DNA from: Adineta vaga
Taxonomy: Eukaryota > Animalia > Rotifera
Length of the DNA: 64,000 nucleotides
Assembly: GCA_021613535.1 (NCBI GenBank)
Contig: CP075493.1
Coordinates: 7,068,001-7,132,000 of the forward strand
Reading direction: 5' to 3'
Shown here: positions 3,601 through 64,000 of the stretch, one piece after another
How the letters are laid out: each line of letters opens with the position of its first letter
How positions within the stretch are numbered: position 1 is the stretch's first letter
Translations under genes and position numbers: made by a program
The notes under the pieces: model-generated
Told to the model about the DNA's origin: nothing
The model's database searches: none
Seen by the model: the letters and a program-made list of their open reading frames with translations, nothing else

Positions 3601-6600
3601 CCAAATGATCCAACACCACAAGAATCTGTTTCATACAAATCTGAATCAAAATTGAATGATCTCACTGATCGTCGACAATCTGCACCAATTGAACGTAAAC
3701 AACGATATGCATCGACTCCAACAACACTCAATACATCATCGATTCCATCGTTAATGAGTGTTCGATCTGATGTTTTACCAACATCTCTTGCACAAACAAA
3801 TCCTTCATCATCATTAACTTCAAAACATTATAAAACTTCAAATCAATCTCAACGACAAGATTATAATAGTTCATCACATTATTCTCAACGAAATGATTTC
3901 TATAATGAAACTAATGATTCTACATGGGGTAATGATGATGATTATTATGAAGATGAAACAGGTTATTATGATCCAAATGCTCAAACACATCAACGTCATC
4001 ATAATTCGATGGGTTATCATTCACATACACATCATCGTGGTTATACCACCTTAGGTTCTTATGGACGTTATCGTCGTGGTGGAACACTTCGTCATCAACA
4101 ACAATATTCTACTTATAATACAAATAATACATCAGGTACATCTTCTTCGCAATTCAATACAAATACAGGATCAACAAAGAAAAAAACACCAATTACTCGA
4201 ACAACACCAAACAAAAATAAAGAAGCTATCAGTGAATCATCAGAACAACAACCGTCCACTATTGTTGAATCATCAAATGTTATTTCAGATAGTGTCGTAA
4301 AAAAACCATCAGCATGGTCGACTGATACTCAACCATCAAAAGTGGAAGAGATTCCAATTATTAAATCAGTTGAAACTCCTACTGTTCCATCATCAATTAC
4401 AATTGAAAAACCAATTGAATCAACAATAACAACTACGGAACCAATGAAAAATGATAATGAATCCAATCTTCTTGTTCAATCTGAATCTGAATTACCAAAC
4501 AAAAAAACAACTACAACAATCGCTTCTTCACAAAAGAAATCTAGTAGAGATCAACAAAATTATCAGCAAGATCAATGCTATCAAAATCAACAAGTATCTC
4601 GTCATCGAACGAATTATTCACGTTCTATGCAAGGTAAATAAAATCTAATCTTTTGAAGATTTTCTTCCAAATAAAATTCTTTTTATTTAGATTATGAATC
4701 CATGCAAATGTCTGCTCAGAATTATTATGGTACAAATCATCGAACAACAGGTGGAAGTCGAAATGCGCGTATGCATGATTTATCCAGTGGTTATTATTAT
4801 GAACCTTCTCAACAGTATGAATCAAAAAATCACTAAAATTTGTTTGTTTTTTTCATCTTTAATTACTGTTCGTCTTCATTTTTAGACGTTATAATAATCG
4901 ATATAATTATTCTAATGAACACTATCCTCAATCACGTTCAACAATTAAAACAACGAAACGTGGAGGTTCATCTTCTACAATTGATCGTCAACAAAAGAAA
5001 TCCAAAACAATTACGACTAGTAATAATACTTCAAGTAGTGCTCGTCAACCGTCCGTTAGTGATAATGAATTAAAAGAAGGTGAAGAATGGGAAACAGCAT
5101 CTGAATCAAGTACGAACATGCGTAATACTCATCATGATAATAATCAACAACAGACGCATAAACCAACTACTACTACTACTACCACTACTACTAATGACAT
5201 GAAAGCAATTGATCATGAACGAACACCACCAAAGAAAAGCTTTTCCAGTCAAAGGTAATAATTGATGAATTGAACGAGCGAAATCTTTATAGTTTTCTTT
5301 TCACACATATCTGTTTAGACCATTGAGTGCACGTCATAATGAAAGTGGTATTCATCGTCGTACATATAATATATACGATCGCAGTAATAAAGCTAGTCGA
5401 GGTCTTGTCAGTCATCGTACTGGTCGTTTATCTTCAAATTTCAAACAAAGTTCGCCACAGAAAACTGATGGAGAAAAGTAAGAACAAATGTCGTATCTCT
5501 TCAAATTATATATCATAAAAATTCAATTTTTAGTTCAACAACAAAACAAATGGGAACAAGTAGAAAAGATCAACATCGTCATTCACTTGATGGTTATGAT
5601 TTAAATAATGTTGCTGGAGTTGTTAAAATTGAAACATTACCAGCTGGTGCATTAGAAGAAGAAAGTACAGCATTTGATGATGGTGGTGAAGAATTTTGTG
5701 TTGTTATGTCAAAACGTGGTCGAAAAGAACAAAAAGCAGCACAATTATCAAAACAAAATGCAATTGAATCAACTACAGAACAAATAACGAAATCTACTTC
5801 AGTTGATAATGATGAACAACAACCCAATGAAGTAAAAATAAAATGATAAAAGTTAAATTATATAAAAATATGTTTCTTCTAGAAATCGTCAAATGACGAC
5901 AATCAAACGAACTCTACGCGTGCGCGAAATGATAAATCTCTTCCACCACGTTTTAATAGTAAATCTACGACACGTCAACATAATACGAAAAATGAGCATC
6001 AGAATAATTCAATATATTATTACGATCAAAATTATTATTATTATGATCAAAGTCAATATTATGATCATGATAATTCTTATTATAATTACGGAAATTACAA
6101 TCAATCTCATCGACAAACATCAACACGTCGAAAACAACGTAGTCAACAAAATCAAGATAGTAATACTATCGATGAACAATTAAACGAGAGAAAAATTGAG
6201 TCAAATGTACCTGATAAAACACATACAATACCATCAAATGTTATGTCTAATATTCAAATGTGGGATCCACATACAGATAGTACAATATCAAAATCTAGTA
6301 AATTGATTGAAAAACGTAAGTTTACAATGAAATCATTGTTGTATGTTACGAGAGACAATCAACTAAAGTTTAACTAGATGTTTTCTATTGATCGTTAGTT
6401 TTTAGTTTCTATTAACTTTAACTTATGTTCATTATCTCAGATTGTCTCTATAGAACATCTTGTTTTTTTTAACAAAATCTTTTATGATCTTTTCAGCTAC
6501 ACATGATCGTAAATTTGGAAATGAAATAGCACCACCTTCATCATCATCAAATGATGCATCACTACCACTTCATCCACGAACTGTATCTGCAGTAAGAGAA

Positions 6601-9453
6601 TAAAATCTTTTGTTTTTCTATCAATCTTAATCTTTTGTTTTAATAAAAGCTACCTGCTCATTCAACGGCGTCGAAAACTAATGAAACTATTGCACGCACT
6701 ATAAAACCACCCAGTACAGATAATAAAACAGATCGTGATAATAAAGTAATGCATTCAATTATGTTATAATGAATCATTTAAAGAAAATTTTTATTCTAAT
6801 TTAGACCAAATCGTCTAGTTACGAAAAGAATGATACAATATCATCATTAGGTTCCAATCAATTATTTGAAAAAGTAACTTACTTTGATTGTCCTAAAATG
6901 ACTATTTAAATTACGTCTATTTTCAGAGTACATTTTTGGATTATGATGATAAACAATCAATTGGTACAGTTGGTGATGATTTAAATCAGAAAATTAATTC
7001 TATCAAAACTATTTGGGACATATCAGATCATCCAAGGTAAATTATCATCAAATGTTTTTTTTTAATATTATAAAACATCTTTATTGATCCAATACATATT
7101 TGATTTCAATAGACAACTTGAACAAACTATCAATACAATGGTTGCTATGAAACAACAACAACAAGAAAATAATATTCAATCGAATAGTTCAGCAAAAACT
7201 GATAGTTATGTTCCAGAATCGATTCCAACATCATCAGCAAATAAATCTGGTCCGAATACGAATGTTTCATCGTCCGTTAATGATGATACACATAGTAAAA
7301 ATCCACCAACAGTTCCTGGTTTACAATCAACTGGATCTTCATCAACAATGAATCAATCAGCAACTTATTCATCAACAAGTGGTTCAAATAAAAATGAACA
7401 GAAAAACATTTGTACCGTAAGTGTTTCTCATAAGATGTGATTTGTTGAAAAAGAATTCTAACTTTTAATCAATATATCTTTAGGTAAAACCTACTCAACA
7501 AGTTGCACCAAATATTCAAGATCAAGTCGATGTTGGCGGTTATCCACCATTTCCACCTCCTACTTTACAAGCACCGATGTCTCAAGTTTCGTTACAACAA
7601 CAACAACAACATCTTCTCCCTCAATCACAAGTCAATCCTTTACATCAACAACCTTCATATCCATTCTATGAAGGTCTTTTACCGCCACACCCTCAACAAC
7701 AACCACCACCACCACAGCAACAACAAGCATTCAATCGAGTAAGATTCGCAGTTCTGATAATTCTTTTTTCTTCATTCGAGACGTTGAGATTTTTCAATTC
7801 CGAACAAAAAACTATCCTATTCCCGTCTATCCCATATTTATATGTATATAGATTTATTCATCAACTTCAAATACTACCAGTACAGATCCGATAAATTCAG
7901 ATTTTTCGGGTATTCAATCTTCACAGATCGTAAGTCTGTCTCTGTATCCTTGCTTGTTTCATCGTTGTAAACGTAAACATCTTCATACATATATGTATAT
8001 ACATATCTTTCTGTTCGATGAACATTTAAAAACTATTTTTAATCAAATTCATATGTGTTTTATTCATACACTCTATTCATGCTTGTCTCTATTTACATAT
8101 ATAGCAGTGAACACGCTATGCTGGTATCATTTAACTAACACGGATATAGATTTTGCAATAGGTGTCATAGTGATCCACTGCAATTCACTTTGTTTCTTTT
8201 TTTTAGTATCCACCGCAAAATTTTTCTTTTCGAAATACAAATATGTACATGCAACCACCACCACCAAATGTACCAAATACAAATTCTATTTATCATCATA
8301 CTTCACAAGGTTCAATATCTGGTAAGTTGTTTTTCCAATCAATATTCGTAGCTAAATGTTCTTCGCTTCTCTCTTCTAATTAAGCGCCACCTCAAAATAA
8401 TGCTTTACCACCTCCACCACCAATGCCTAGTTACCCATCACCTTTTCTAGTTGATCATGGTGCTCATATGCTTGGACAAGCACAACCACCGCAAGGATAT
8501 ATGAGTAAGCTTTTTCTTTGTATTTTCTTAGAAAGTATATTTCTTTTATTATTCTTTATTTACAGACAACCAAATTATGTCTGGTCGGCCACTGGTCCGT
8601 TCTATCGAACACCCCCACCACAACAGATACAAACACCTCCAGGACCACCTTATGGCTCCCAAGATCCATTAGGTCATGGTGGATATTATCCAACATTCTT
8701 TCCACCACCGAATTCAAATGCTCCTGGACATCCAACAACTCATAATGTAAGGTTCACTAGAATTTCTCATTATTTTGATAACATTATCGAGTCGAATATC
8801 ACATATGAAATACTTATACTGTACAGACATCTGAGCAAACTAAATTTTCTTTTCTTGCTATTTTAATTACAAAACGAAACAATCTATATATATATATTAT
8901 TTCTTTTTAGTTATATGGGCAAAATGAAGGATTTCATCCAGGTCATCCTCAGCTATTTACTCGTGGTGGCTCAATAGATCGTAATGATCATTCATTAATG
9001 TCTCAAGCATTATCTCGTCAAACAAATTATCCTTCAAACTCATCCAATCAACAACAACAAGGTCCACCACCATCTCTATTATCACAAAACTTGAAACCAC
9101 CATTTCATACTAATCAACAACAATCATCATCAGCTAATCAGCCTTCATTCTATCCTCCACCACCACCACCAAATCAATTTAATCGACCACCGGTACCTAT
9201 CGGTGCGATGAATTCTGCGAACAATCGTCCCCAAAATCAACAAGTGCCGAGTTTAATGAGTGGTTTCAGTAAAAATATTTCAAATACTGGTAATAATATG
9301 AATAATACTCAACCATTATTTCAACAACGTCAACCATTATTGCCTCCACAATCGAACAATAATCGTTCTCTATATCAACATCATCCACCATATCCAAACT
9401 ATTCAAAATCAACTGGTTCGAATGATGATAATGTTAAGCAAAAGCATACATAA
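606..9453 (+). CDS. PRRC2: PRRC2/BAT2-family (nocte-like) large disordered RNA/translation-associated protein, multi-exon
   Basis: ATG at 606; intron 712-792 joins MSVPSK...RAPA to RTQGWANLGKINSRRIPPPANVPSLKSE (BAT2_N motif). Also NDFPRL, GPSFRPANLASWKEGGGR, WASASQEVNYEEKIRFSDDED and SLPPRF, plus Q/P-rich exons ending at TAA 9453. Internal exon boundaries only partly traced. Confidence 0.85.
1502..1541 (+). repeat. CAA/CAG polyglutamine tract in PRRC2-like exon
   Basis: (CAA/CAG)n encoding Q13 in ORF 786-1622. Confidence 0.9.
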
Positions 9454-52296: not shown

Positions 52297-53583
52297 TTAC
52301 GATGCAGCTGAGTCATTTGTTGAGTTGTTTTTCTTTTCAATAGATATTGATTTTTTTATTTTACTTTGCTTGTTTTTCGTGGAAGTTGAAGTATTGTTTG
52401 CTGTTGATTGATCTTCTTCGTCTACGGCAACCGATGGAAGTGTTTTATCACTTGCTGTGATGGCATTCTCATTCTCGCTTTTACCAGATTTCTTTGTTTT
52501 ACGAGTAGTTGTTGTTTGAGATTCATTGGTGATGGTATCATTTTCATCTTCATTTTTTTCAGATGCTGTTGATTTCTTTCGAAGATTTACATGATAAGTC
52601 TCCGCCCAAAAATTAAGATCTTCAATGGAGTTTTGTTTCGTTTTAATATGTTCGATTAGATCATCGAAGATAACATCTTGTCCTGCCGAATAATCAGATG
52701 TATGAGCAGCTTGAGCAAAACTAATTAAAACTTCTTGAATTTGATCCAATCGTTCCTTTTCATATTCTCGACATTCTTGATAGATTTCCATTGCTTTTTG
52801 TTGGTAAGTTTCTTGTTCATGAACATATTCTTTTTCTGCTCGTGCAATTTTATCTTGAATAATTTCTAATTCATTTTGGCGTTTTTCTTGAGTATCTTTA
52901 GCACGTGTACTTTTGCTCTTGCTAACAGTCGAATCCAAACTATAATTTTCACATTGAATATCAGCTGCAAGTAATGATTCTTTGGCTTGTTTTTCTTGTT
53001 CATGTAATTTTTCGAGTGTTTCGGCAAGTTTTGATAGAGCTGAACGAGCTGTTTTGAACGCTTTTCTGACTTGTTCGGATCGATAATGTTTGTGTACAGT
53101 ACCTAAACGTTCCTTTGGATACATACGATCGACTTGACGATGAAATGTAGCAATGACATGTTCTATCTCATCACAACGAGTTTGTACAAGTTCAGCAAGT
53201 TTGTGTGACGATTTAATAGTTTGATATTGAGCACGTTTTGTTGTATGATACGATGAAATAGTTGGCTGTTGTTTTAATTTTCCATTCCATTTCGTTGTAT
53301 GAGACGAAAGACTGTCAGCATAGTTTTGTTGAAGAGTAAGATAGTCTTTTAGCCATTGGAGAATATCTTCAGATACTTTATAGCCATCGTCAAGACATTT
53401 AATTATTGCTAGATAGTTATCATCATTCAAAAATGAATTATGAATATATTCATTTGAACCGTAGGTTGAATCATTATCGAAAGGCAAACGATTAGAACGA
53501 AGTTTATCTGTGATACCTGAAAGAGTTGTTCGTCTAATCGAATCTGTTCGACGTAAAAGTGCGGATTTGATACGTAAAGTCAT
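52297..53583 (-). CDS. PACSIN/syndapin-like F-BAR protein lacking SH3, intronless
   Basis: SFLNDDNYLAIIKCLDDGY...QQNYADSL...KW, YQQKAMEIYQECREYEKERL and EDLNFWAETY resemble the PACSIN F-BAR. The tail is K/S/T/E-rich with no SH3 or NPF. Confidence 0.72.
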   Translation of the reverse strand: MTLRIKSALLRRTDSIRRTTLSGITDKLRSNRLPFDNDSTYGSNEYIHNSFLNDDNYLAIIKCLDDGYKVSEDILQWLKDYLTLQQNYADSLSSHTTKWNGKLKQQPTISSYHTTKRAQYQTIKSSHKLAELVQTRCDEIEHVIATFHRQVDRMYPKERLGTVHKHYRSEQVRKAFKTARSALSKLAETLEKLHEQEKQAKESLLAADIQCENYSLDSTVSKSKSTRAKDTQEKRQNELEIIQDKIARAEKEYVHEQETYQQKAMEIYQECREYEKERLDQIQEVLISFAQAAHTSDYSAGQDVIFDDLIEHIKTKQNSIEDLNFWAETYHVNLRKKSTASEKNEDENDTITNESQTTTTRKTKKSGKSENENAITASDKTLPSVAVDEEDQSTANNTSTSTKNKQSKIKKSISIEKKNNSTNDSAAS

Positions 53584-53816
53584 TTCAAGTTTCCGAGTAG
53601 TAAATAGAAATAAAAGTGACAGAAATCACACACTACACGTATATATATACCATCTGTAGGCTGTTCTGTTTCTTGTTTTGCGGAAGAATAGAGAACAGAT
53701 GAATCATACATATGGAATTCAGTTTTCTTACTTATTCTCTACAGAACGACAACTAAATCTACTGTTTTCGACGATATTTTATCTGATTTTATCAATAAAA
53801 ACGCATTTTGTCGCAG

Positions 53817-53921
53817 AATTACGTCATATTGCATAAGTGTAATTACGTAAGATTTTTTAGAGAGATATTTTTTATTTACCCCTAGTGAAATAAAAATCAC
53901 CTACACAACAATTACGTCATA
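53817..53921. promoter_or_regulatory. Cluster of bZIP-type sites upstream of the F-BAR gene
   Basis: AATTACGTCATA at 53817 and 53910, TTGCATAA at 53829, TTACGTAA at 53843. Confidence 0.45.
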
Positions 53922-54537
53922 AATGTCTTGTTGGCAACGCATCAAAACATATTAATGATTCATCAGTAGTATCAACGCATATTTTCAATTTCTTTACTAA
54001 AGACAAAGAAAATTCCATATCGATTTTAATGGAATAATCCAATAATTAAAAAAAGAAAATGACACCATACCTATGCAATTTAGTTTTGATTAACATATAG
54101 AATTTTAATTGAATATTTCTTTATGAGAAAATCTGAATAATATATATGATTATTAATTAAAAATTTGTTTTTATTTTGACATCCATCGACATAACAACAC
54201 AAACAATTCTAGTCAAAATCTGTGTGGGTGTCCTTGGAATCACTTTAGACGTATGGTGATAGATATAATAGTGAATAAAAGTCAAGAGAGATTATATGTC
54301 GTTTTGATCGAGCAAATATTTGATTTGTGTGAATGAGATGAATAGAATTTCTTTTATGAAAAATGTTTTATTATTGACTATAAATTGTTTTTAATAAAAT
54401 TTCATTTTTCAATTGACAATGGCACTATTCAATTATCTAACTATTGCTCTTATCACACGCAGTATTTCTTATTCTTTTTAGAGTGTGTTTTTTCAAAAAT
54501 GTCTGAAGTAAACAAAATAAAAAACTTATCGTACCAT

Positions 54538-56307
54538 TTATTCGGACGTTTGATTTAAAGTATAAAATAATAGATAAGCTTTGGAATTGAAATGCAATTT
54601 ATCAGAAGGTAAAGATTTGATTTGATCATCATCACATTCAAACCATTGCGATTGATTTCGAGAGAATGTTGTATAATGTCCATCGTTTATTGAACCATTA
54701 TGATTGATAACAGAATAAAGTGTATAAAGTGTTTGAGCCGTTGGTGGAGAAAAACAATATTGTTTGACATCGAAATTATCCTCAGGATAAAGTACAAGAG
54801 TATTATTTTTCATCCATTTTTGTTCGACATTCAATTCAAATCTTCATAAAAAATGAAATTATCGATACTTGCTTCAAATATTCTTACCTTTTAAATTGAA
54901 TTATTAAAATCTTCGGAAATTTCTCAATTTCTAAACGTCGTTCAGCATCACAAAGATATTTACATACAGGACCTAGAAAAGTTGACTATATGAAATATAT
55001 AAGATTACTATTCGAACCTACAAAACCATTTCGAATCATCGGTTAGATATTCACATTGACTGACAGCTGCAAGACAATCTTGTAATGTACATTGATTTGT
55101 TGATGAAATTGGAAGAGATAGACAAATAAAAGGTTCTAATCGAGAAGAAGATTGCTGACATTGTAAACATGTTGTCGTTGTTTTGTAACTACCCTGAATG
55201 TAAAGAAAAAAGATTATGGATTAGATATAACTTTACTAGAAAATACTAACATAAAATAAGTCAAGAAATGTTAAATTATTTTCTGTTTGATTGATATTCT
55301 GATTTTCATTGTCCGATTTTATCTATGGAAAATAAATCGATAATTCTTTTCTATGAGTTTTATCTTCATTCTTACTTTTGTTATATCTTTATCTAAACAA
55401 TCCAATAAAAGTAGAAGAAATTCATGAGCATCTTGTTGTTGATTTTTGAAATAAGCATTGTTTAAATGACCAAAAATTTGTTTGAATGGATTCGGTGTTA
55501 AAACACAATAATCACCACAAGATAATAATAATAATAGATTCAAATATTCATTCAATATAGTTCCTTCTGAATACGATCGAATTTCAATACTGAACTCTTT
55601 TTCAGTTAGCAAAAAATCAGTTAATAAAGAAGTTAATGATAATGATTGGAGCACTGAATTCATATAACAAGTTCCACCGAGATTTTTCAATCCACATAGC
55701 TCTTGTGTTTGTTTGGATACCTTAGAAATAGCGTGATAATCTTGAACAATTTGACGATGAAACCAATCATCGTATAAAATGGATTTTATCTGCTCGTCTC
55801 TTGCACGGCTATTATCAAATAAATAAAACAGTTTGAGAATAGAAAGAAATTGCTCGTCTCAACAGCATCTTACCTTTCTATAACGTCAAGATTATAATTT
55901 CGTGAATAATTGTTATCCCAAAATTCTCGTCTATTCACATCATAACAGACAGCAAATGACATACATCTTGCTACGATTGATAATGATTGTAATTTTTCTT
56001 TTTGTAAAGTTAATTTAAATTGAAATAAATCTGTATTAGTGTCTGAATAGTATACCATATGATGTGCATCTATAGTAGAACTTGTCTTCCATTGATCAAT
56101 GGTAAAACGAATAGAAACGTGTTTATGAAATGAAATATTGTTAACACGTACAGTCCCATAAACAGTAATACCTCTCGTAAACATATCTTCTAATGCGATT
56201 TGTTGTTCATAGATACGTTGAAGAAGATTCGACGGACGTTGAAAATTTTTTGGCATACGAAGAGAATATTCTCGATTGACAAGTGGTTTCTCAGATGAGA
56301 CGCTCAT
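54538..56307 (-). CDS. CBM21 (glycogen-binding) - USP deubiquitinase fusion protein, 6 exons, ~500 aa
   Basis: Exon 1 is CBM21 (VYGTVRVNNISFHKHVSIRFTIDQW, TDLFQF, FAVCY, WDNNYSRNY). The 65-nt intron 55873-55809 joins it in frame to a USP domain (GLKNLGGTCYMNSVLQSL, QQDAHEFL, CLQC, LSLPI, WFCPVC, PKILIIQLKRF, YSVINHNG...GHYT, WFECDD). Confidence 0.85.
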
Positions 56308-57912
56308 ATTAGATTTCGCTTTGAAATAAAGATCACTTGTAGCATTAAATAAGCCTTTTCATGTGAATAAGATTCTGAAACTATCTAAAAAAAACAATAC
56401 TTAAAAGGTCATATGAAATTATTTAATTCTATTCCCACTAAAGGTATTTGCCCTGAAGACATACTTAAAGTTGTTTTCATGCAAAGTAAACATAATACAA
56501 TGCACATCGAAAGAAAATATTTGCTTACTTTCAAAAGATTGATGACTGTTCTTATACATGTAAACTAACGAAAATTTTATTCCACTAGGGTCGCTCGAGG
56601 ACAAGATAGAACGTTATAGTTTTAACTATCTAATCATCGAACTCAGGCACTTGGTTAGTACAAACGATCGATGTTCATTGAAGAATATGATGATATTTTG
56701 AAAATTAACTACGAAATAATTATTTCTGAAATAGAATTGTCAATGAATCTAGATAATATCTGGTGAGAAAAGAAAGATGTTCAATCTATAAAACTCTCTT
56801 CTTCTCGTTCATATTAAAAGACATCGATCAAATTAATTGATTCTAAGTATTCATTAGAGAATCTATATCGATAGTTGGATTAAATCTTTGAAAGTGTTTC
56901 ATTAACTCTTGTTCGCTTTGACTATAGAATTAAGTTTGACAGGTTAAAAATCTAATGAAAATCTAAACTCAAGATTATACTTATAGCAAGATCGCTTTGC
57001 TGAGACTGGGAATGTATGATGAAGAGCAAGAAGAATACAACTCAAAATTCAATTTTCTTGACGAAAAACCATCATATGATGCACTTTTTGATAAAAATCT
57101 TCAATGCTAAAAGATCCAAAATCATAATTTTACTGCTGATGAAAAGGTAATATTCCATAACAACTAATATTTCCATATGGTATCCGTATCCGCCATTTTG
57201 ATTTTTTTTTTCGTTTTGTGAAATAACTAGTCTAAATTTGAACCAATCAAACTTTCCCTTTGTTTTTTTCTTTTGTCCATCCTGTCGTTACTTTCTCTTG
57301 CTGTTCTTTTTCTTTCTACACACACCTATTTTGACTACTTCTGTCTTTTTTCCTCTCAATCGTTCATGATAAAAATCAACAAACTTCCTCTGTAAGTTAT
57401 TAAAAAAAAGCATATCATATTGCTATTTTTATACAGTTTCTTGCTTATAAATATATCAATTCATGTATATAATTATCTTTCTATTACTCTAAATGAGAAC
57501 GATCTGACGAGCATATTAAAACTATATATATATACATACATACATACATACATACAATTACATTCTTCCTTTCAATACGGCCAATTGATCGATCTCTCAC
57601 TATTTTGTTCCCTCTTCACGATGGATGGACGGCGCCGTTTATACGCCTGCATACAGATACATATATGCACAAGGCAAAGGAAAACGTTGCTCATTTTCTT
57701 TCTCTCTTTCTTTCTTTTACTTTACTACTCGTTCTTCATTTCTTCCTTCTTCTATACGTCGGTAAAATCATCATCATAATCATCATCGTCGTCGTCGTCA
57801 TTTTACATTTTTTCGTTTTGATTTCTTCTAGTTTTATAGAGATGTTCTGTATAAAATTACAAACTCATTATTCATCATTTCATTCTTCGATTTTTCATTG
57901 GTAAAATATTCA

Positions 57913-60900
57913 ATGAAAGTTATTATCAGTTTTGGTGAAAAAAAAGTTGTTGTACCATGTGGTTTCGATGGCGATATATCTATACGTGAATTAATTCAAT
58001 CAGCAACAGCGAAATATTCCAAATTAGTAAGTCTATTTTCATAGACATATAGAAATTTAATACAATAGAAAGCAATTGAAGACATATGCGTATACATGTC
58101 AATCACATAAATGAAATGATTGTCTTTTCTAGTCTTATAATACTGGTTCGATTCTGAACAGTGATCAAGTTCAATTACGATTAAATAATGGTGCTGTCGT
58201 CGATCCTGATGATCGAGTTTGTGATGTAGTTGATGATCGAGAAGAAGTAATTTGTTATTTGTTTTTTTTTGATTAATTATATTATTTTATTTAAAATTTC
58301 ATGTAGTTATTTGCTGTTATCGATTCTCATCAATCAATCTATCCATTCTATACACCACCGGCAATGAATAGCAATGGAGAATTATCTTCTAGTGTAACAA
58401 GTTCGAATCTTTCATCAAGTTTATCAGAACATGAACGTTTAATGATGCCGTCTTCAACAAATCGTCATGAAGTGATTGTAACTGACGCTGATCTTCGAAG
58501 TAGGTCATCTCTATTCTCTTATCAATCGTTGATTTTAAACGATAAAAATGAAGAGAACGAAATTTGAACTTGTAAATCATGTTCACGTCAAGAACATTGA
58601 ACAACAGGCAAAGTGAACGATGATGAAGAAATTTGAGTATATACTATCTATGCGTGTGTATGTGCGTGACGATTGATAAATGAGATAGGTCTGATTACAT
58701 GTTAACGTTGTCATAAAAATAACATGTCCTTGAAAGTGAATTAAACTTCTCTTACATCAGGTTAATGAGAAAGAAAAAGTTTCTTTTTACAAGAAAAGAA
58801 AGCATGAAACATTAACCCAATGAATTTCGCACATCATTGATAGACATTTTTATCGATGATTGATTGTTACTGTTTTTGACCGCTCTTCATATAAACACGA
58901 TTGAACTTATTCATATTTTTGTTGACTAGAAAGAAAGAAAGAAGAAGAAGAAGAAGAAGAAAAGAATTTTTGAATATTACCCAGCAAGTAGTTTCATATT
59001 ACTATAATAAAAGTGATCATTAAGGACATCGAATAGAAAGAAAGGTTAACGGATTTATACGAACGATTTAAAAATCACATCCTTTTATTTTATGACTCAG
59101 TAAGCATTCTTGACTAGTCTGAAAATTTTCGTTATTATTTCTAATTTCTCACGAATAGAAACGAACAATATCTTTACGAATCATTAAATTTTATAATCTC
59201 TTTTCCTTTGTAAGATATCTTTGATGAATAAAACCTACAACACTATAAGCATCTACGTATGTAATCGTTTAAATAATAGGTAGCCTGCTACAAATTTTCG
59301 TAGCGTCCACTCTTTCAGTTTTCTAATATATCATATTACATATCATCAACGAACACTTTATCAAATTACCGATAGGAAATATTTTATATTGTTCTTCACT
59401 GAATAATCATCATTCTTTTTCGTTCTTGTGCTTTTTCATCAAAGATTAATTCTATGATATTTTATTTCTTGATTAGAATCTTTAAAAATCAGTATAATCA
59501 ATCGAAGAATAGAAATAATAGAACTCCTTGAAAATTTCAGACGATTTTTGTACATTATACTTCAGTTTTTATTCTTTCTCTTTTCACGTTTCAATCATGA
59601 CGTCTTGAAGTTAACGTAAACATATTCGATAGATGATTTGAATAATTAAAAACAATAAAAAAATGTCAACTTTTCGTTTTTTTCTTTCTCTCTCTCTGCA
59701 GATCGATCGCTACGTGTTAAAAACGATCCTATTTACAATTCACAACAGGTAATAGATTACAAATGATTCATCTACTATCTAATATCTTCTTCTACTTCTT
59801 CTAGTCGATCTCTCACCAATCAATATCTTCAAATAATAAAACGATATATCGTCAAACAAATTCTCCTCCAACACAAGATGCAATGAGAAAGCAGTTTTCT
59901 GATGATATTGGTGAAATGTATAATGTTTACATTGATGATAAAACTGGTGATAAAGTATTTTCCATCATTCTACCAAAAGAAAATAGTCCGTTAGGAATAC
60001 ATGTTATACCATATAATGGTGATGAACAACCAGTCAACGGTCTTGTATTACAAAATATTGAAGCCGATGGACGTGTTAAACGGCATGGCATTTTACAGAT
60101 TAATGATCGAATTATTGAAATTAATCGAACCAATATTGAACGTTGTTCATTTGATAAAGCTCAATTGATATTTCGTACAGCTTTGTTAGAACCAGAGTTG
60201 GAATTAAAGATCGTTCGAAATATGAACAAACCACCAATACCACCTAAATCAGCTTCATTTCGTGCAACTAATAAACAACGTACAACATTATCAGAAATCA
60301 ATCAAAACAATGATCTTTCATTTGTTGATCATGATTCAAATATGAATTCATTAAATACAAGACGAATAGGAAAAATCATTAAAATTCTACTAGTTAAAGG
60401 TATGATTATATTCAATAGTATTTTTCCTTACATTGACCTTCATAATTTCATTGATAATGCATGTCGACAAGAAAAATTGATTAACCTAGGCAATAGAAAT
60501 CCTTGATGTCAAGTTTCTCGTCACAACTAATGAAATGTAATCATATGTAGAGATGAATGGATGGTAGACACGTTAGATTGGCAAATGGATATTTAAGTTG
60601 TATTAGTCCAAAAAGGTCATGAGGAATGAGACTAATGAATGATTTTATTAACTTCATAGTAGAGTTCAATTGCATGAATTCAATCAAATATTCGACTGAT
60701 ACAAACAAAAAGAAATGTATCTGTATAATGCATAGTTTTATATTCGCAAATACTTGAAAAGTTCTGTTTATTAGTAATTGACTTAGTGTATATGTTTTTT
60801 AGGAAATGATGGTCTTGGTTTTAAACTTGCCTCACGTGATAATCCTACCGGTGTTGCCAATCCAATATATGTAAAAACAATATTTCCAAAAGGTGCAGCT

Positions 60901-62404
60901 ATCGAAGATGGACGTTTACAACGTGGTGATCGATTATTATCAGTGAATACTATTGATATCACGCGAATGTCCTTACAAGAAACAGTTGGTTTATTACGTG
61001 AAACACGTGTTGGTGATGCAGTGGAATTCTGTATATCAAGACAACACGATGGATTAGTACTATCAGATCTAGTATGTTTTAATACTACAAAAAAGATTCT
61101 TTTTTCATTTACGATTATTTTCAAGGTAAATGACGAAACATCTATCATTGATAATACAGCACATGAAATTAAACCACAAATCATGACATTTGATATACCA
61201 TTAAACGATACATCTTCAGCTGGTCTTGGAATAACGTTGAAAGGCAAAACATCAATTGTTGACGGACAGTCAGTAGATTTAGGAATATTTATTAAAAGTA
61301 TATTAACTGGTGGCGCAGCATCTCGAGTATGTTTATTTTTTATTTTAAAAATGATATTTATTGACTAGTTTTTGCTTTTGATTGTGTAGGATAATCGCTT
61401 GCGTCCAAATGATCAACTTCTTGTTATTAATGATTCATCATTAGTAAATATATCAAATTTAGAAGCTGCTGCTATCTTACATGAAGCTGTTCGACGTGAA
61501 ATTCATCCTGGATTTATCAAAGTAACAATATCACGTCTACCAATAACATACGAAAATGAACAGGAACGTTTGAATTCAACTAAATATGTCAAAGAAACGG
61601 ATTTATCACTACCTTCACTATCATTAATTCCAGTCAATAACGATGAAAATGAATTAGATCTAACAACATTTGTTCCTCCACCACCTCCTATCAGTCGAAA
61701 ACCATCGTTACAACAATCAAGTAAATCTTTCTTGACTTTAACATTCATTGATTTATTATTATGGAATAATTTAATATCATTTAGATCATCATTCTTTCCG
61801 CATAGATCCAAATATTCGTTCTTCTAGTCCTCGTTCTTCATCTATATCGTCCAGAAATAAACAAGGTCTTCATCTACAACAAAATGAACAACGTAAGATT
61901 CTATTTTACTGCTCTTGTACAATCTCTTTTTCTAATTTTCTAGAAACTCCAGATGATGTCGATAGTAACAGGTAAATTCAAAAACTCGTTTTTTTCTCTA
62001 TTAAAGAAGAAACCTATATATTAGATCTATATTTCTAGAATAGTTTGCATAAAGTTGATTTCAAACTCTCTAAGAGCATATGAATAGAATATTGAATCAA
62101 TATATTTTATTATAATCATTTAGAGTAAATCCATTTGAACGTGAAACATTATTTCGTCAAAGTGTCTCTGAAAAACGTCGTCTAACACATCAACGAAATA
62201 AACAAGTTATTCAATGGAAACAACGATCATTTCATGAAAGTCGAACACAAAATGAACGAAGTAAGTTTAGTCAGATTGTTAATCATTATTTATTTCATAT
62301 AATAAATCATTGGTTTTTTGATTAAAATGAGTTCTTATTGCAGAATCATATCCGATATCGACTGCAACATCAATTGAAATTCTTACACCTCTCATCGATA
62401 TCTC

Positions 62405-62435
<31 letters not shown>

Positions 62436-64000
62436 AATGAGACAGATGAACATTGTCGATATTCTGTGACGAGACGAGCAGGTCTCTATCTCTCTTTTCT
62501 TTTTTGAAATTATTTCATTTGTTGTTGCATGTCTACATTGACGAAAAAACACTTGTTTATGATATGGGACATCTTCTTATATCGAAAAAAAAGCAATGCA
62601 TGTTTCTTGAAGAAAAAAAAACAGTTCATTTTTTAATGAGCATGTCTTTTGTTTTTCATTTCAAAGTTCAATTTATAAATTAAATTTTTTATGTTTTATT
62701 TAAATAGAACAATCAACTCGTGTATTACCCGATTCAACTTCGAATAAAAATCGTACATCGCCAAGTTTAATTCGTTCGTCATCATTAGAAAGTATTCCTA
62801 AAATCATCGACGAACGTGAATCATCGAAATCTATATCAAACAATGATGAAGAGCGAAAACGTCAAGCAAAACTTCGTAGTCGAGCATGTAATGATTCGTT
62901 TCGACAAGCTGTAGATAAATCCTACGGTCAAAATTCAAATCTAAATGATGATGGTAAGACTATCATAAAGAAAGAGAACAGATTTTGCAGTAAAAAAAAG
63001 ACGTTATTTTTACTGGAAAATATCATACTTCAAAAAGAACGAGTAGGATGAACTGATTGTTGATTAGAAAGTGATGTTCTGACCTTGACGTACTTTATTA
63101 TGAAATTTTTTGTCATAGCGGATATCAATGTGTCTTTATGAAACGGGAAATCGTCATTAATGTTGATGATTACTTCAGTGGGCAGTAGTATTGAGTAAGA
63201 ATTCATTTCCCAACGGTAATTATTTGTCGGAAATATTCAAAAGTTCATTTCCGCATAACTGAATCAAATTATCCAATTTTCAAGGTTGTAAATGTAATAA
63301 TGTGTTTAGATTTGATAGATGAAGTTAAATCAAATAAATCAGATAAACAACGATTTCGTTTTTCAAATTTATTTACAACTAAGTAAGTTTCTTCTTTTTT
63401 ACATGATAGTATCATTATTTATGTTTCTTTTCGTGATCATTTATTTCAGATCAAAACGAAAAGAATATCCCGAAGAAAGGTAAGAATAATTTTCTTTTGT
63501 CGTTTATTATCTCATGTCTTTTCCTATACATAGAATATCAAAAACGATTCCTATACAATATCAATTAGCATCTCATGACATTCGACCGATATTATATTCA
63601 CTCCCACCACCTGCACCTTTTAGTTCTCGACAAGATTCAGTTTCATCATCCTCATCTTCATCCGCACAAAGATCATTGAAAATTCCACACGTATACTGAA
63701 TATTTACACTCTTTTCCTCATTCTTAATTTAATATTTAGAAGAATAATCGTCCTTCAGCGGTATTTTCCTATTCACTATCTTCAAATGAACAAACACAAC
63801 AACAGCAACAAGGTTATCAACTATACCGTTTCAATACATCCACTCAAACACCTTCTTCAAATAAACCAAAATCGGAACATTTCACTTCAGTTCGTCATGA
63901 ATTCCATGGATTTCATGATTATCAAACAAAAAACATTCCAAGTCAATCATCTCTTTCGATCAATAATCAAAAATCATCTGGTAAACGAATGGATATTATT
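57913..64000 (+). CDS. par-3: Par-3/Bazooka polarity protein (3' end beyond window)
   Basis: N-terminal oligomerisation domain MKVIISFGEKKVVVPCG. Three PDZ domains (PLGIHVIP; GLGFKLASRDNP...IYVKTIFPKGAAIEDGRLQRGDRLL; IPLNDTSSAGLGITLKG). aPKC-binding-like FERETLFRQSVSEKR, SSSLES, RSRACNDSFRQAVDKSY. Confidence 0.92.

What the first reader, a model, noticed from the sequence alone, without database searches (positions are those of the whole stretch)
54538..56307. CBM21-USP fusion: candidate glycogen-targeted deubiquitinase
Seen: the CBM21 ORF ends at GAA AG|GTAAG. A typical 65-nt intron (55873-55809, ending ATAATAG) joins it in frame (VIE-S-RARDEQ...) to a complete USP domain with catalytic Cys (GTCYMN), His (GHY), Asp (CDD) and both CxxC zinc-ribbon pairs. 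The USP frame has no Met before its catalytic Cys and is closed by a stop inside the intron, so it needs an upstream exon, and the CBM21 exon is the obvious one. Known: in animals CBM21 occurs in PP1 glycogen-targeting subunits (PPP1R3 family) with an RVxF motif, and none is visible here. Glycogen-associated ubiquitination is done by laforin-malin and by LUBAC/HOIL-1. Inference: this may be a DUB delivered to glycogen particles, reversing ubiquitination of glycogen enzymes or of the polysaccharide itself. I know of no described protein with this architecture. It could matter for carbohydrate handling in a desiccation-tolerant animal.
Basis: partly seen in the sequence, partly recalled or inferred. 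Interest (0 to 1): 0.88.

Follow-up and report, generated by a model that had tools for sequence, protein, structure and literature searches.

The report
Rotifer glycogen-binding deubiquitinase fusion gene
This is a real, expressed six-exon gene of the bdelloid rotifer Adineta vaga. It joins a glycogen-binding module (CBM21) to an intact ubiquitin-removing enzyme (USP), an architecture I found only in bdelloid rotifers and unnamed close relatives and in no paper, so it is a natural candidate for a deubiquitinase that works on glycogen particles.

Summary
The minus-strand gene has six exons (ATG 56307, stop 54538). The 65-nt intron 55873-55809 joins the CBM21 exon in frame to the USP exons.

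- **Transcript evidence:** contigs from two studies lack this intron. One 1,924-nt contig spans all six exons with all five introns removed. Its 5' end carries the tail of the bdelloid spliced leader 77 nt before the ATG, so no upstream coding exon exists in that mRNA.
- **Database status:** the product equals NCBI UJR15328.1 (499 aa, hypothetical protein, Adineta vaga). Pfam gives CBM_21 at 34-140 and UCH at 183-492.
- **Conservation:** five other bdelloid species carry the same architecture with all catalytic, zinc and most sugar-site residues kept. In several unnamed relatives both domains lie in one uninterrupted ORF.
- **Distribution:** only 16 clusters among 5.8 billion hold both domains, and all are close kin.
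- **Origins:** the USP is closest to USP8. The CBM21 is closest to the rotifer's own PPP1R3-like genes, but it lacks their RVxF motif.

Glycogen targeting and DUB activity are inferred, not shown. No paper on this architecture was found, and the scan had not noted it before. I rate it a new variant of a known kind, of moderate to high interest.

The parts
56385..56386 (-). Trans-splice acceptor AG (TTTTTTTTAG|ATAG). This is the 5' end of the mRNA, carrying the 3' end of the bdelloid spliced leader.
   Evidence: the X1 and X3 contigs end at 56386 with 9 loose letters, CTTGGTAAG (+ strand), which is CTTACCAAG on the gene strand....ACTTACCAAGAG stands in 42 copies in this genome and 0 in the control. 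There is no read depth upstream of about 56500.
56308..56384 (-). 5' UTR of 77 nt with two short upstream ORFs: ATG 56362 (5 codons) and ATG 56345 (13 codons, whose stop overlaps the main ATG as ATGA).
55874..56307 (-). Exon 1 coding part, residues 1-145 (phase 2 end): CBM21 starch/glycogen-binding module with no RVxF motif.
   Evidence: CBM_21, 97 bits, E 1e-27. (PTG, GL and GM CBM21 structures, E 1e-15 to 2e-12).
55809..55873 (-). Intron 1, 65 nt, GTAAG..ATAG. It contains the in-frame TAA (55872-55870) of the CBM21 frame and the TGA (55861-55859) that closes the USP frame.
   Evidence: joint 55808|55874 in X1, X3 and X6.
55376..55808 (-). Exon 2: a linker of about 16 residues, the USP8-like pre-catalytic segment (RQIxxDYxAI), the Cys box (C192, oxyanion N187) and the QQDAHEF box.
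   Evidence: UCH, E 1.3e-18; alignment to the USP8-like paralogue from exon-2 residue 17.
55323..55375 (-). Intron 2, 53 nt.
   Evidence: joint 55322|55376 in X1, X3 and X5.
55251..55322 (-). Exon 3, a variable Asn/Gln-rich insert of the USP domain.
55194..55250 (-). Intron 3, 57 nt, GTTAGT..CAG.
   Evidence: skips 57 (cut +1) in X1, X3 and X5.
55022..55193 (-). Exon 4: first zinc-ribbon pair, C322/C325.
54973..55021 (-). Intron 4, 49 nt, GTAGGT..TAG.
   Evidence: skips 49 (cut +2) in X1 and X3.
54888..54972 (-). Exon 5: second zinc-ribbon pair, C371/C374.
54842..54887 (-). Intron 5, 46 nt. If retained it reads AGG TAA, which gives the annotated 399-aa isoform without the His box.
   Evidence: skips 46 in X1, X3 and X5. 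P0001 ends ...IIQFKR.
54538..54841 (-). Exon 6 coding part: His box (GHY, H454), Asp box (CDDD, D469/470), and stop TAA at 54540-54538.
   Evidence: UCH, E 2.9e-18.
54198..54537 (-). 3' UTR, at least 340 nt.
   Evidence: X3 record 6 reaches 54198.

Best explanation
Gene I4U23_002280 of Adineta vaga encodes one 499-residue protein. An N-terminal CBM21 module came from the rotifer's PPP1R3-type glycogen-targeting subunits, without their PP1-docking RVxF motif. About 16 variable residues tether it to a catalytically intact USP domain derived from USP8.

The most likely mechanism is this. The CBM21 anchors the enzyme on glycogen particles through the conserved site II sugar clamp, and possibly also on glycogen synthase through the conserved WDNN..NY patch. 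The raised local concentration lets the otherwise unspecific USP domain remove ubiquitin from glycogen-bound proteins such as glycogen synthase, PPP1R3-like subunits, phosphorylase or debranching enzyme. That would protect them from degradation or from ubiquitin-dependent routing.

Shown: gene structure, transcript, domain identities, conservation of catalytic, zinc and sugar-site residues, and restriction to bdelloid-type rotifers. Inferred: glycogen binding, DUB activity, the substrates and the physiological role.
For: Transcript:
- One contig spans all six exons, and the CBM21|USP joint stands in two studies.
- The genome has no second copy that could be a processed pseudogene.
- The spliced-leader tail lies 77 nt before the ATG.

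Protein:
- It equals NCBI UJR15328.1, and each exon's peptide is found in it in order.
- Pfam gives UCH 182 bits and CBM_21 94 bits.

Conservation:
- Six named bdelloid species share the architecture at 57-62% identity.
- Invariant residues include N57, K62, W73, F129-N133, Y138, N187, C192 and the QQDAHEF box.
- CBM21 and USP share one uninterrupted ORF in unnamed relatives.
- The intron position is kept in another relative.
- Synteny with Par3 is shared.

Sugar and partner sites, mapped from the alignment onto PTG residues listed in PMC9582199:
- Site II: N177/F180/K182/D214 correspond to N57/F60/K62/D93. E181 is H61 and Y203 is H83.
- Site I: W193/W246/N248/N253 correspond to W73/W130/N132/N137.
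- GM N228, needed for GYS1 recruitment (PMC6235537), maps by my numbering to N137.

Catalytic domain: the best solved match is human USP8, E 1.3e-56.
Against: - No biochemical or localisation data exist.
- Two of six site II contacts differ in A. vaga (H61, H83), and site I Tyr196 is Ser76.
- The AlphaFold model from the 12-sequence alignment was poor (pLDDT 49.9), so nothing can be said about domain packing or autoinhibition.
- The RNA runs were available only as contigs, so expression level and condition dependence are unknown.
- USP8-type domains act on many substrates, so the targets could be unrelated to glycogen.
Confidence: 0.6

Rival explanations
1. The CBM21 acts mainly as a protein-recruitment module, binding glycogen synthase directly as the GM CBM21 does. 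The enzyme would then be a dedicated glycogen-synthase deubiquitinase, with glycogen binding secondary or lost.
For: The GM CBM21 recruits GYS1 directly, independent of glycogen, and N228A abolishes this (PMC6235537). The matching patch FWDNN..NY, including N137, is invariant or nearly so in all fusion orthologues. Two site II sugar contacts are altered in A. vaga.
Against: The core site II residues N57, F60, K62 and D93 are conserved too, which would not be needed for a purely protein-binding role. My mapping of GM N228 to N137 rests on an assumed construct numbering.
Confidence: 0.15
2. The enzyme removes ubiquitin that is ester-linked to glucose units of glycogen itself (the HOIL-1-type modification). 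It would be a glycogen deubiquitinase proper, controlling ubiquitin-dependent lysosomal clearance of glycogen.
For: Glycogen is ubiquitinated in cells and tissues, and the deubiquitinases involved are stated to be unknown; OTULIN cannot cleave the ubiquitin-glucose bond (PMC13345935). Most DUBs outside the OTU family cleave oxyester-linked ubiquitin about as well as isopeptides, and USP2 removes ubiquitin from LPS in vitro (PMC9527308). A CBM-tethered USP is placed exactly where such a substrate is.
Against: Nothing shows that rotifers ubiquitinate glycogen. I did not look for a HOIL-1-like ligase in this genome. The same tethering serves protein substrates equally well.
Confidence: 0.12
3. 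The fusion is expressed and the USP is active, but the CBM21 no longer targets glycogen. It would serve as a structural, regulatory or autoinhibitory domain, or bind another glycan, and the substrates would be unrelated to glycogen metabolism, for example endosomal cargo as for USP8.
For: Site I and site II substitutions (S76, H61, H83). The catalytic domain is USP8-like. No functional data exist.
Against: Conservation of the sugar-clamp residues across lineages that are only 33-62% identical overall argues that carbohydrate binding is under selection.
Confidence: 0.1
4. There are two separate genes, a small CBM21 protein ending at TAA 55870 and a USP with another 5' exon. The joined form would be an assembly or read-through artefact.
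For: The CBM21 frame has an in-frame stop one codon after the donor. Prokaryote-style gene callers annotate the equivalent exon alone, one entry being named 'protein phosphatase 1 regulatory subunit 3A/B/C/D/E'.
Against: The exact GT..AG joint appears in contigs from two studies, and one contig spans all exons. No contig listed retains intron 1. Loose ends near 55655-55694 are roughly 40-nt cross-matches of other USP transcripts at the conserved Cys box, with 4 mismatches, not alternative 5' exons. Relatives encode both domains in one uninterrupted ORF. The USP frame has no start codon before its catalytic Cys.
Confidence: 0.02

Closest known systems
PPP1R3 glycogen-targeting subunits of protein phosphatase 1 (GM/PPP1R3A, GL/PPP1R3B, PTG/PPP1R3C)
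   Same: The CBM21 module is homologous (E 1e-15 to PTG 7QF7), with the site II sugar clamp and the WDNN..NY patch. The logic is the same: a CBM21 brings an unspecific hydrolase to glycogen and its enzymes. The nearest CBM21 paralogues in this genome are PPP1R3-like genes.
   Different: There is no RVxF PP1-docking motif, and the mRNA begins 77 nt before the ATG. The effector is a covalently fused cysteine protease acting on ubiquitin, not a recruited Ser/Thr phosphatase. The CBM21 is N-terminal rather than central or C-terminal.
USP8 (UBPY) and the USP2/USP21/USP4/USP15 group of USP catalytic domains
   Same: The whole catalytic domain matches best to human USP8 (2GFO, 8XPN; E about 1e-56). 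The closest paralogue in the genome is a USP8-like gene with a rhodanese-like region and a USP8-type N-terminus by eye, not scanned against Pfam. The shared pre-catalytic segment, Cys box, QQD box, zinc ribbon and His/Asp boxes are all present.
   Different: It lacks the USP8 dimerisation and rhodanese regions; Pfam finds only CBM_21 and UCH. It is about 49% identical to the rotifer USP8-like paralogue over exon 2, so it is a separate, lineage-specific gene.
Laforin-malin complex
   Same: A carbohydrate-binding module (CBM20 of laforin) brings ubiquitin machinery to glycogen, where PTG, glycogen synthase and others are modified (established knowledge; reviewed in PMC8067510, which I listed but did not read).
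   Different: It runs the opposite reaction: an E3 writer against a DUB eraser. It is a two-protein complex rather than one chain, uses a different CBM family, and is mainly a vertebrate system.
HOIL-1/LUBAC-OTULIN axis and glycogen ubiquitination
   Same: It concerns ubiquitin on glycogen or unbranched glucans. The erasers of the ubiquitin-glucose bond are not identified (PMC13345935, PMC9016349).
   Different: These are writers and an M1-chain-specific OTU DUB with no carbohydrate-binding module, and OTULIN cannot cut the ubiquitin-glucose bond. The rotifer protein carries its own glycogen anchor.
Engineered FKBP-GFP-CBM20 / FRB-HOIL-1L induced-proximity system
   Same: A starch-binding module is used to place ubiquitin enzymology on glycogen (PMC13345935).
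   Different: It is synthetic, carries a ligase rather than a DUB, and uses CBM20 rather than CBM21. The rotifer gene is a natural, conserved counterpart with the reverse activity.

Membership tests
USP deubiquitinases (peptidase C19, Pfam PF00443 UCH) | Full-length match to the family profile above the curated cut-off | tested here: met
   P0151 scores 182.3 bits against a cut-off of 23.9, profile positions 1-254 of 254, residues 183-492.
USP deubiquitinases (peptidase C19, Pfam PF00443 UCH) | Cys box with the catalytic Cys and the oxyanion Asn | tested here: met
   GLKNLGGTCYMNS with C192 and N187, invariant in 12 of 12 aligned sequences.
USP deubiquitinases (peptidase C19, Pfam PF00443 UCH) | His box and catalytic Asp/Asn | tested here: met
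   GHYTTF (H454) and WFECDDD (D469/470), kept in all six full-length orthologues.
USP deubiquitinases (peptidase C19, Pfam PF00443 UCH) | Four-Cys zinc ribbon in the fingers subdomain | tested here: met
   C322-x2-C325 and C371-x2-C374, kept in all six full-length orthologues.
USP deubiquitinases (peptidase C19, Pfam PF00443 UCH) | Hydrolysis of ubiquitin conjugates | not testable with these tools
   Needs a recombinant enzyme assay.
USP8 orthologues | N-terminal USP8 dimerisation domain (PF08969) and rhodanese domain before the catalytic domain | tested here: not met
   Pfam finds only CBM_21, UCH, UCH_1 and a weak CBM53 match in P0151. The likely USP8 orthologue lies elsewhere (L020, C1:10.02 Mb); its N-terminal and rhodanese-like regions were read by eye, not scanned against Pfam.
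CBM21 carbohydrate-binding modules (PF03370) | Match to the family profile above the curated cut-off | tested here: met
   94-97 bits against a cut-off of 28.9, profile positions 4-112 of 113.
CBM21 carbohydrate-binding modules (PF03370) | Site II sugar clamp (PTG N177, F180, E181, K182, Y203, D214) | tested here: inconclusive
   Four of six are identical (N57, F60, K62, D93). E181 is H61 and Y203 is H83 in A. vaga, though Tyr is common there in orthologues.
CBM21 carbohydrate-binding modules (PF03370) | Binding to glycogen, starch or cyclodextrin | not testable with these tools
   Needs pull-down, ITC or NMR.
PPP1R3 PP1 glycogen-targeting subunits | RVxF PP1-docking motif N-terminal to the CBM21 | tested here: not met
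   There is no [RK]-x(0,1)-[VI]-x-[FW] in residues 1-33. The mRNA 5' end is a spliced-leader acceptor 77 nt before the ATG. The paralogue L007 has KKNVRFAD.
PPP1R3 PP1 glycogen-targeting subunits | Conserved WDNN..NY patch at the end of the CBM21 (substrate / glycogen-synthase recruitment) | tested here: met
   F129-W130-D131-N132-N133 and Y138 are invariant and N137 is nearly invariant. Its role in GM is given in PMC6235537.

The most novel reading that the evidence does not exclude
The protein is a dedicated eraser of ubiquitin ester-linked to glycogen itself. It would be the first natural glycogen deubiquitinase, evolved in bdelloid rotifers to keep glycogen stores out of ubiquitin-triggered lysosomal clearance, for instance during entry into or exit from anhydrobiosis.
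Probability: 0.13. Interest if true: 0.85.

Novelty: new variant of a known kind. Interest (0 to 1): 0.62.

Why it matters
Ubiquitination at glycogen is now known to shape glycogen quality control and glycogen storage diseases. It acts on glycogen enzymes (malin-laforin) and on the polysaccharide itself (HOIL-1/LUBAC). A 2026 study states that the deubiquitinases involved are still to be found (PMC13345935).

The rotifer gene is a natural, conserved protein in which a glycogen anchor and a USP catalytic domain form one chain.

- It gives a concrete enzyme to test for removal of ubiquitin from glycogen-bound proteins or from glycogen.
- It could serve as a ready-made glycogen-directed DUB tool for cell studies.
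- It shows that the PPP1R3 logic, in which a CBM21 recruits an unspecific hydrolase, has been reused for a second kind of post-translational eraser.
- Its restriction to bdelloid-type rotifers invites a link to their unusual carbohydrate and stress biology, but that link is untested.

Tried and rejected
- **AlphaFold2 model.** I folded the 499-aa database protein with the 12-sequence alignment A1. Mean pLDDT was 49.9 and pTM 0.44, too poor to use, so I ran no fold search and make no claim about domain packing.
- **ESM Atlas.** The feature search gave no usable hit.
- **Second fusion in the same genome.** The CBM21 paralogues (L018, L019, L021, L022) have no USP within several kb. The USP8-like paralogue (L020) has no CBM21 upstream. 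No ohnologue of the fusion gene was found.
- **Alternative 5' exons for the USP.** I considered the loose ends at 55655-55694 in X1 and X3 and rejected them. They are roughly 40-nt matches with 4 mismatches at the conserved Cys box, from other USP transcripts.
- **Literature.** Searches for CBM21 plus deubiquitinase, carbohydrate-binding module plus USP plus rotifer, the locus-tag prefix, and glycogen plus DUB plus malin plus PTG found no description of the architecture.
- **Taxon of the most divergent unnamed relatives (P0153, P0015).** A second homologue search returned only bdelloid names, so whether these are non-bdelloid is open.
- **Steps not done.** I did not build or submit a joined spliced model. 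Exons were searched one by one by reference, and full-length work used the database protein P0151 returned. I did not run complex prediction, because no specific partner pair was justified.
Full report
**What is there**

The region 54198-56386 holds one gene on the minus strand. The ORF list shows a 145-codon ORF from ATG 56307 to TAA 55870. Several shorter open frames follow on the same strand.

Pfam scans were done exon by exon, by reference:
- The first ORF is CBM_21 (97 bits, E 1e-27).
- The second and last pieces are the N- and C-terminal halves of a UCH/USP domain (E 1e-18 each).

- The sequence reads ...GAA AG|GTAAG.
- The intron is 65 nt, at 55873-55809, ending ATAATAG.
- The reading continues as ...VIE-S-RARDEQ.
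- The exon-2 frame is closed upstream by TGA 55861-55859, inside the intron.
- Exon 2 has no Met before the catalytic Cys.

**Transcript evidence**

I laid four public runs on 53400-57600. They were kept as contigs and their RNA label is only a guess.

- X3 record 6 (1,924 nt) covers 56386-55874, 55808-55376, 55322-55250, 55192-55020, 54970-54888 and 54841-54198. That is all six exons with all five introns removed.
- X1 record 4 bridges the CBM21|USP joint with 193 and 513 letters on its two sides.
- X6, from another study and under another organism label, shows the same joint.
- After the tool's 'cut +1' and 'cut +2' notes, all introns are GT..AG and 46-65 nt long.

Own-genome searches find only one copy of each exon. 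Intron-less contigs therefore cannot come from a processed pseudogene, so they are spliced RNA.

The contigs end at 56386 with nine extra letters. On the gene strand these read CTTACCAAG, followed by the genomic AG. The 22-mer GCTTATTACAACTTACCAAGAG is the bdelloid spliced leader as I recalled it, and PMC1925144 confirms that a 23-nt leader exists. It stands in 42 copies in this genome against 0 for the control.

So the mRNA is trans-spliced 77 nt before the ATG, and no upstream coding exon belongs to it. No contig listed retains intron 1. Short loose-ended matches at 55655-55694 are cross-matches from other USP transcripts at the conserved Cys box.

**The protein**

An exhaustive HMMER search with the CBM21 exon returned a 399-aa protein that is 100% identical. 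Its cluster also holds a 499-aa member, P0151.

Both are NCBI 'hypothetical protein I4U23_002280 [Adineta vaga]': UJR15329.1 (399 aa) and UJR15328.1 (499 aa). The genome is 100.8 Mb in six contigs, and the window is C1:7,068,001-7,132,000.

The coding exon lengths sum to 1,500 nt. Each exon's peptide occurs in P0151 in order, at residues 1, 146, 290, 315, 372 and 400.

I did not build or submit a joined spliced model. All full-length work used this database protein.

Pfam on P0151 gives CBM_21 at 34-140 (94 bits) and UCH at 183-492 (182 bits, full profile).

Key residues:
- catalytic C192, with oxyanion N187
- the QQDAHEF box
- zinc pairs C322/C325 and C371/C374
- H454
- D469/470

The 399-aa isoform corresponds to retention of intron 5 (AGG TAA) and lacks the His box. 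None of the four runs showed it.

**Conservation and distribution**

Searches with the 399-aa protein, with a divergent relative and with a 12-sequence profile gave the same result. Only 16 clusters among about 5.8 billion carry both PF03370 and PF00443.

The named members are:
- Adineta vaga
- A. ricciae
- A. steineri
- Rotaria sordida
- R. socialis
- Rotaria sp. Silwood1

The rest are unnamed metagenome contigs. After them the score drops from about 364 bits for the weakest two-domain hit, past a few USP-only fragments of the same genes (196-249 bits), to about 158 bits for plain USPs. The first plain USP is a USP8 with PF08969.

Of the 150 best CBM21 representatives, only four clusters contain a USP, and all four are of this family.

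Caveats:
- The word-indexed searches see only proteins of 0.55-1.75 times the query length.
- Only the top 150 of 2,855 CBM21 hits were inspected.

The alignment shows the five named orthologues at 57-62% identity to A. vaga. In all of them the Cys box, QQD box, zinc ribbon, His and Asp boxes and the CBM21 core are kept.

In the unnamed relatives L026-L029 the CBM21 and the first half of the USP are one uninterrupted ORF called by a prokaryote-style gene finder. This proves the fusion independently of any splice model.

Another relative (L030, 61% identical) keeps the same donor position, GAA AG|GTGAG, with USP ORFs downstream.

A divergently oriented Par3 gene lies upstream in L026, L029 and L031. 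In the window itself I confirmed only a PDZ-domain ORF on the opposite strand at about 59.9-61.8 kb. This fits orthology.

**Origin of the two halves**

The USP half:
- Its best solved match is human USP8 (E 1.3e-56), then USP15, USP4 and USP2.
- The closest paralogue in the genome (49% over exon 2) is a USP8-like gene on the same chromosome, with a USP8-type N-terminus and a rhodanese-like region as read by eye, not scanned against Pfam.
- The similarity starts at exon-2 residue 17, in the segment RQIxxDYxAI.
- The true linker between the halves is therefore only about 16 variable residues.

The CBM21 half:
- It is closest (about 40%) to an ohnologous pair of PPP1R3-like genes (L002, L003).
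- Their CBM21 is C-terminal and ends ...DVIEK* or ...EVFER*, like exon 1 here.
- Another paralogue (L007) carries a classic KKNVRFAD PP1-docking motif.
- The fusion protein starts just after the region where that motif would lie, and it has none.

None of the paralogues is itself fused.

**Can it bind glycogen?**

I used the HMMER alignment to PTG (7QF7) and the contact list in PMC9582199.

Site II, the dominant cyclodextrin site:

| PTG residue | Fusion residue | Status |
|---|---|---|
| N177 | N57 | kept |
| F180 | F60 | kept |
| K182 | K62 | kept |
| D214 | D93 | kept |
| E181 | H61 | differs |
| Y203 | H83 | differs (often Tyr in orthologues) |

Site I:

| PTG residue | Fusion residue | Status |
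|---|---|---|
| R187 | R67 | kept |
| W193 | W73 | kept |
| W246 | W130 | kept |
| N248 | N132 | kept |
| N253 | N137 | kept |
| Y196 | S76 | differs (Tyr or Phe in most orthologues) |

GM N228 is essential for direct recruitment of glycogen synthase (PMC6235537). By my numbering of the 2M83 construct it maps to N137, which is an inference.

These patterns fit a functional glycogen and glycogen-synthase binding module. They do not prove one.

**How it most likely works**

In PPP1R3 proteins the CBM21 turns the unspecific PP1 into a glycogen-specific enzyme by scaffolding (PMC6235537). The rotifer gene replaces the PP1-docking part with a covalently attached USP.

The simplest mechanism is the same scaffolding applied to deubiquitination. 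The anchor raises the local concentration of an intrinsically broad USP8-type domain at the glycogen particle. Ubiquitin is then removed from glycogen-bound proteins.

A more novel variant is removal of ubiquitin ester-linked to glycogen itself:
- Glycogen ubiquitination is now documented in cells and tissues.
- OTULIN cannot cut the ubiquitin-glucose bond, and the relevant deubiquitinases are stated to be unknown (PMC13345935).
- Most non-OTU DUBs cleave oxyesters about as well as isopeptides (PMC9527308).

I could not read from the text whether the USP10 and USP21 domains used in that study cleaved the sugar conjugates.

Nothing here links the gene to desiccation.

**Comparison and verdict**

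It is a member of the USP family and carries a CBM21. It is not a USP8 orthologue, because the N-terminal domains are absent. It is not a PPP1R3 subunit, because the RVxF motif is absent. It works like a PPP1R3 scaffold with a different eraser, and like an inverse of the laforin-malin arrangement.

The architecture exists in public databases only as unnamed or hypothetical entries.

I rate it a new variant of a known kind. The gene model is certain, the function is plausible but untested, and interest is 0.62.

Noticed in passing
window 55791-55800 and 55851-55860 (- strand); also 62471-62480 (+): The G+C-rich 10-mer GAGACGAGCA occurs in intron 1 and again 60 nt later at the start of exon 2, in different frames, with partly similar flanks (TGC...). 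The window has 3 matches against 0.02 expected. It may be a trace of a local duplication linked to the origin of this intron, which is absent in several relatives. Unexplained.
   Followed up: partly
window 56308-56384 (- strand): The 5' UTR holds two short upstream ORFs: ATG 56362 with 5 codons and ATG 56345 with 13 codons. The stop of the second overlaps the main start as ATGA. This could mean translational control.
   Followed up: no
G000 C1:2551160-2551336, C1:7347779-7347956, and clusters on C2 8.68 Mb, C5 9.88-9.93 and 10.91-10.93 Mb, C6: There are 42 copies of the spliced-leader exon sequence (T)GCTTATTACAACTTACCAAGAG. Many lie in head-to-head pairs about 155 nt apart and in clusters. 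These are presumably the SL RNA gene families. The first base differs from the G I recalled.
   Followed up: no
window 54842-54887 (- strand): NCBI lists a second isoform (UJR15329.1, 399 aa) that corresponds to retention of the 46-nt intron 5. It ends before the His box and so would be catalytically dead. All contigs laid here have the intron removed.
   Followed up: partly
window about 59883-61827 (+ strand): A divergently oriented PDZ-domain gene, likely Par3, lies upstream of the fusion gene. The same neighbour (Par3_HAL_N_term, PDZ) lies upstream in the relatives L026, L029 and L031, so synteny is conserved.
   Followed up: partly
window 52297-53583 (- strand): The downstream neighbour is a 428-aa single-exon ORF with a weak FCH/F-BAR match (E 1e-4, below the cut-off). 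It is transcribed, with contigs at 53400-53626 in X1 and X3.
   Followed up: no
L020 = G000 C1:10020000-10029999, about 4600-8050 (- strand): This is the likely USP8 orthologue of A. vaga, with a USP8-type N-terminal helix region, a rhodanese-like segment, a Pro-rich linker and a USP domain in several exons. It is the closest paralogue of the fusion's catalytic half.
   Followed up: partly
G000 C1:9588103-9591471 (L014, L016, L017): Three USP-domain hits lie in tandem on the + strand within 3.4 kb, with open frames of 383-399 aa. This looks like a local USP gene array.
   Followed up: no
L030 904-1353 and cluster of P0002: In a relative that keeps the intron, automated metagenome annotation calls the CBM21 exon alone. 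One entry names it 'protein phosphatase 1 regulatory subunit 3A/B/C/D/E'. Such entries hide the fusion in databases.
   Followed up: partly
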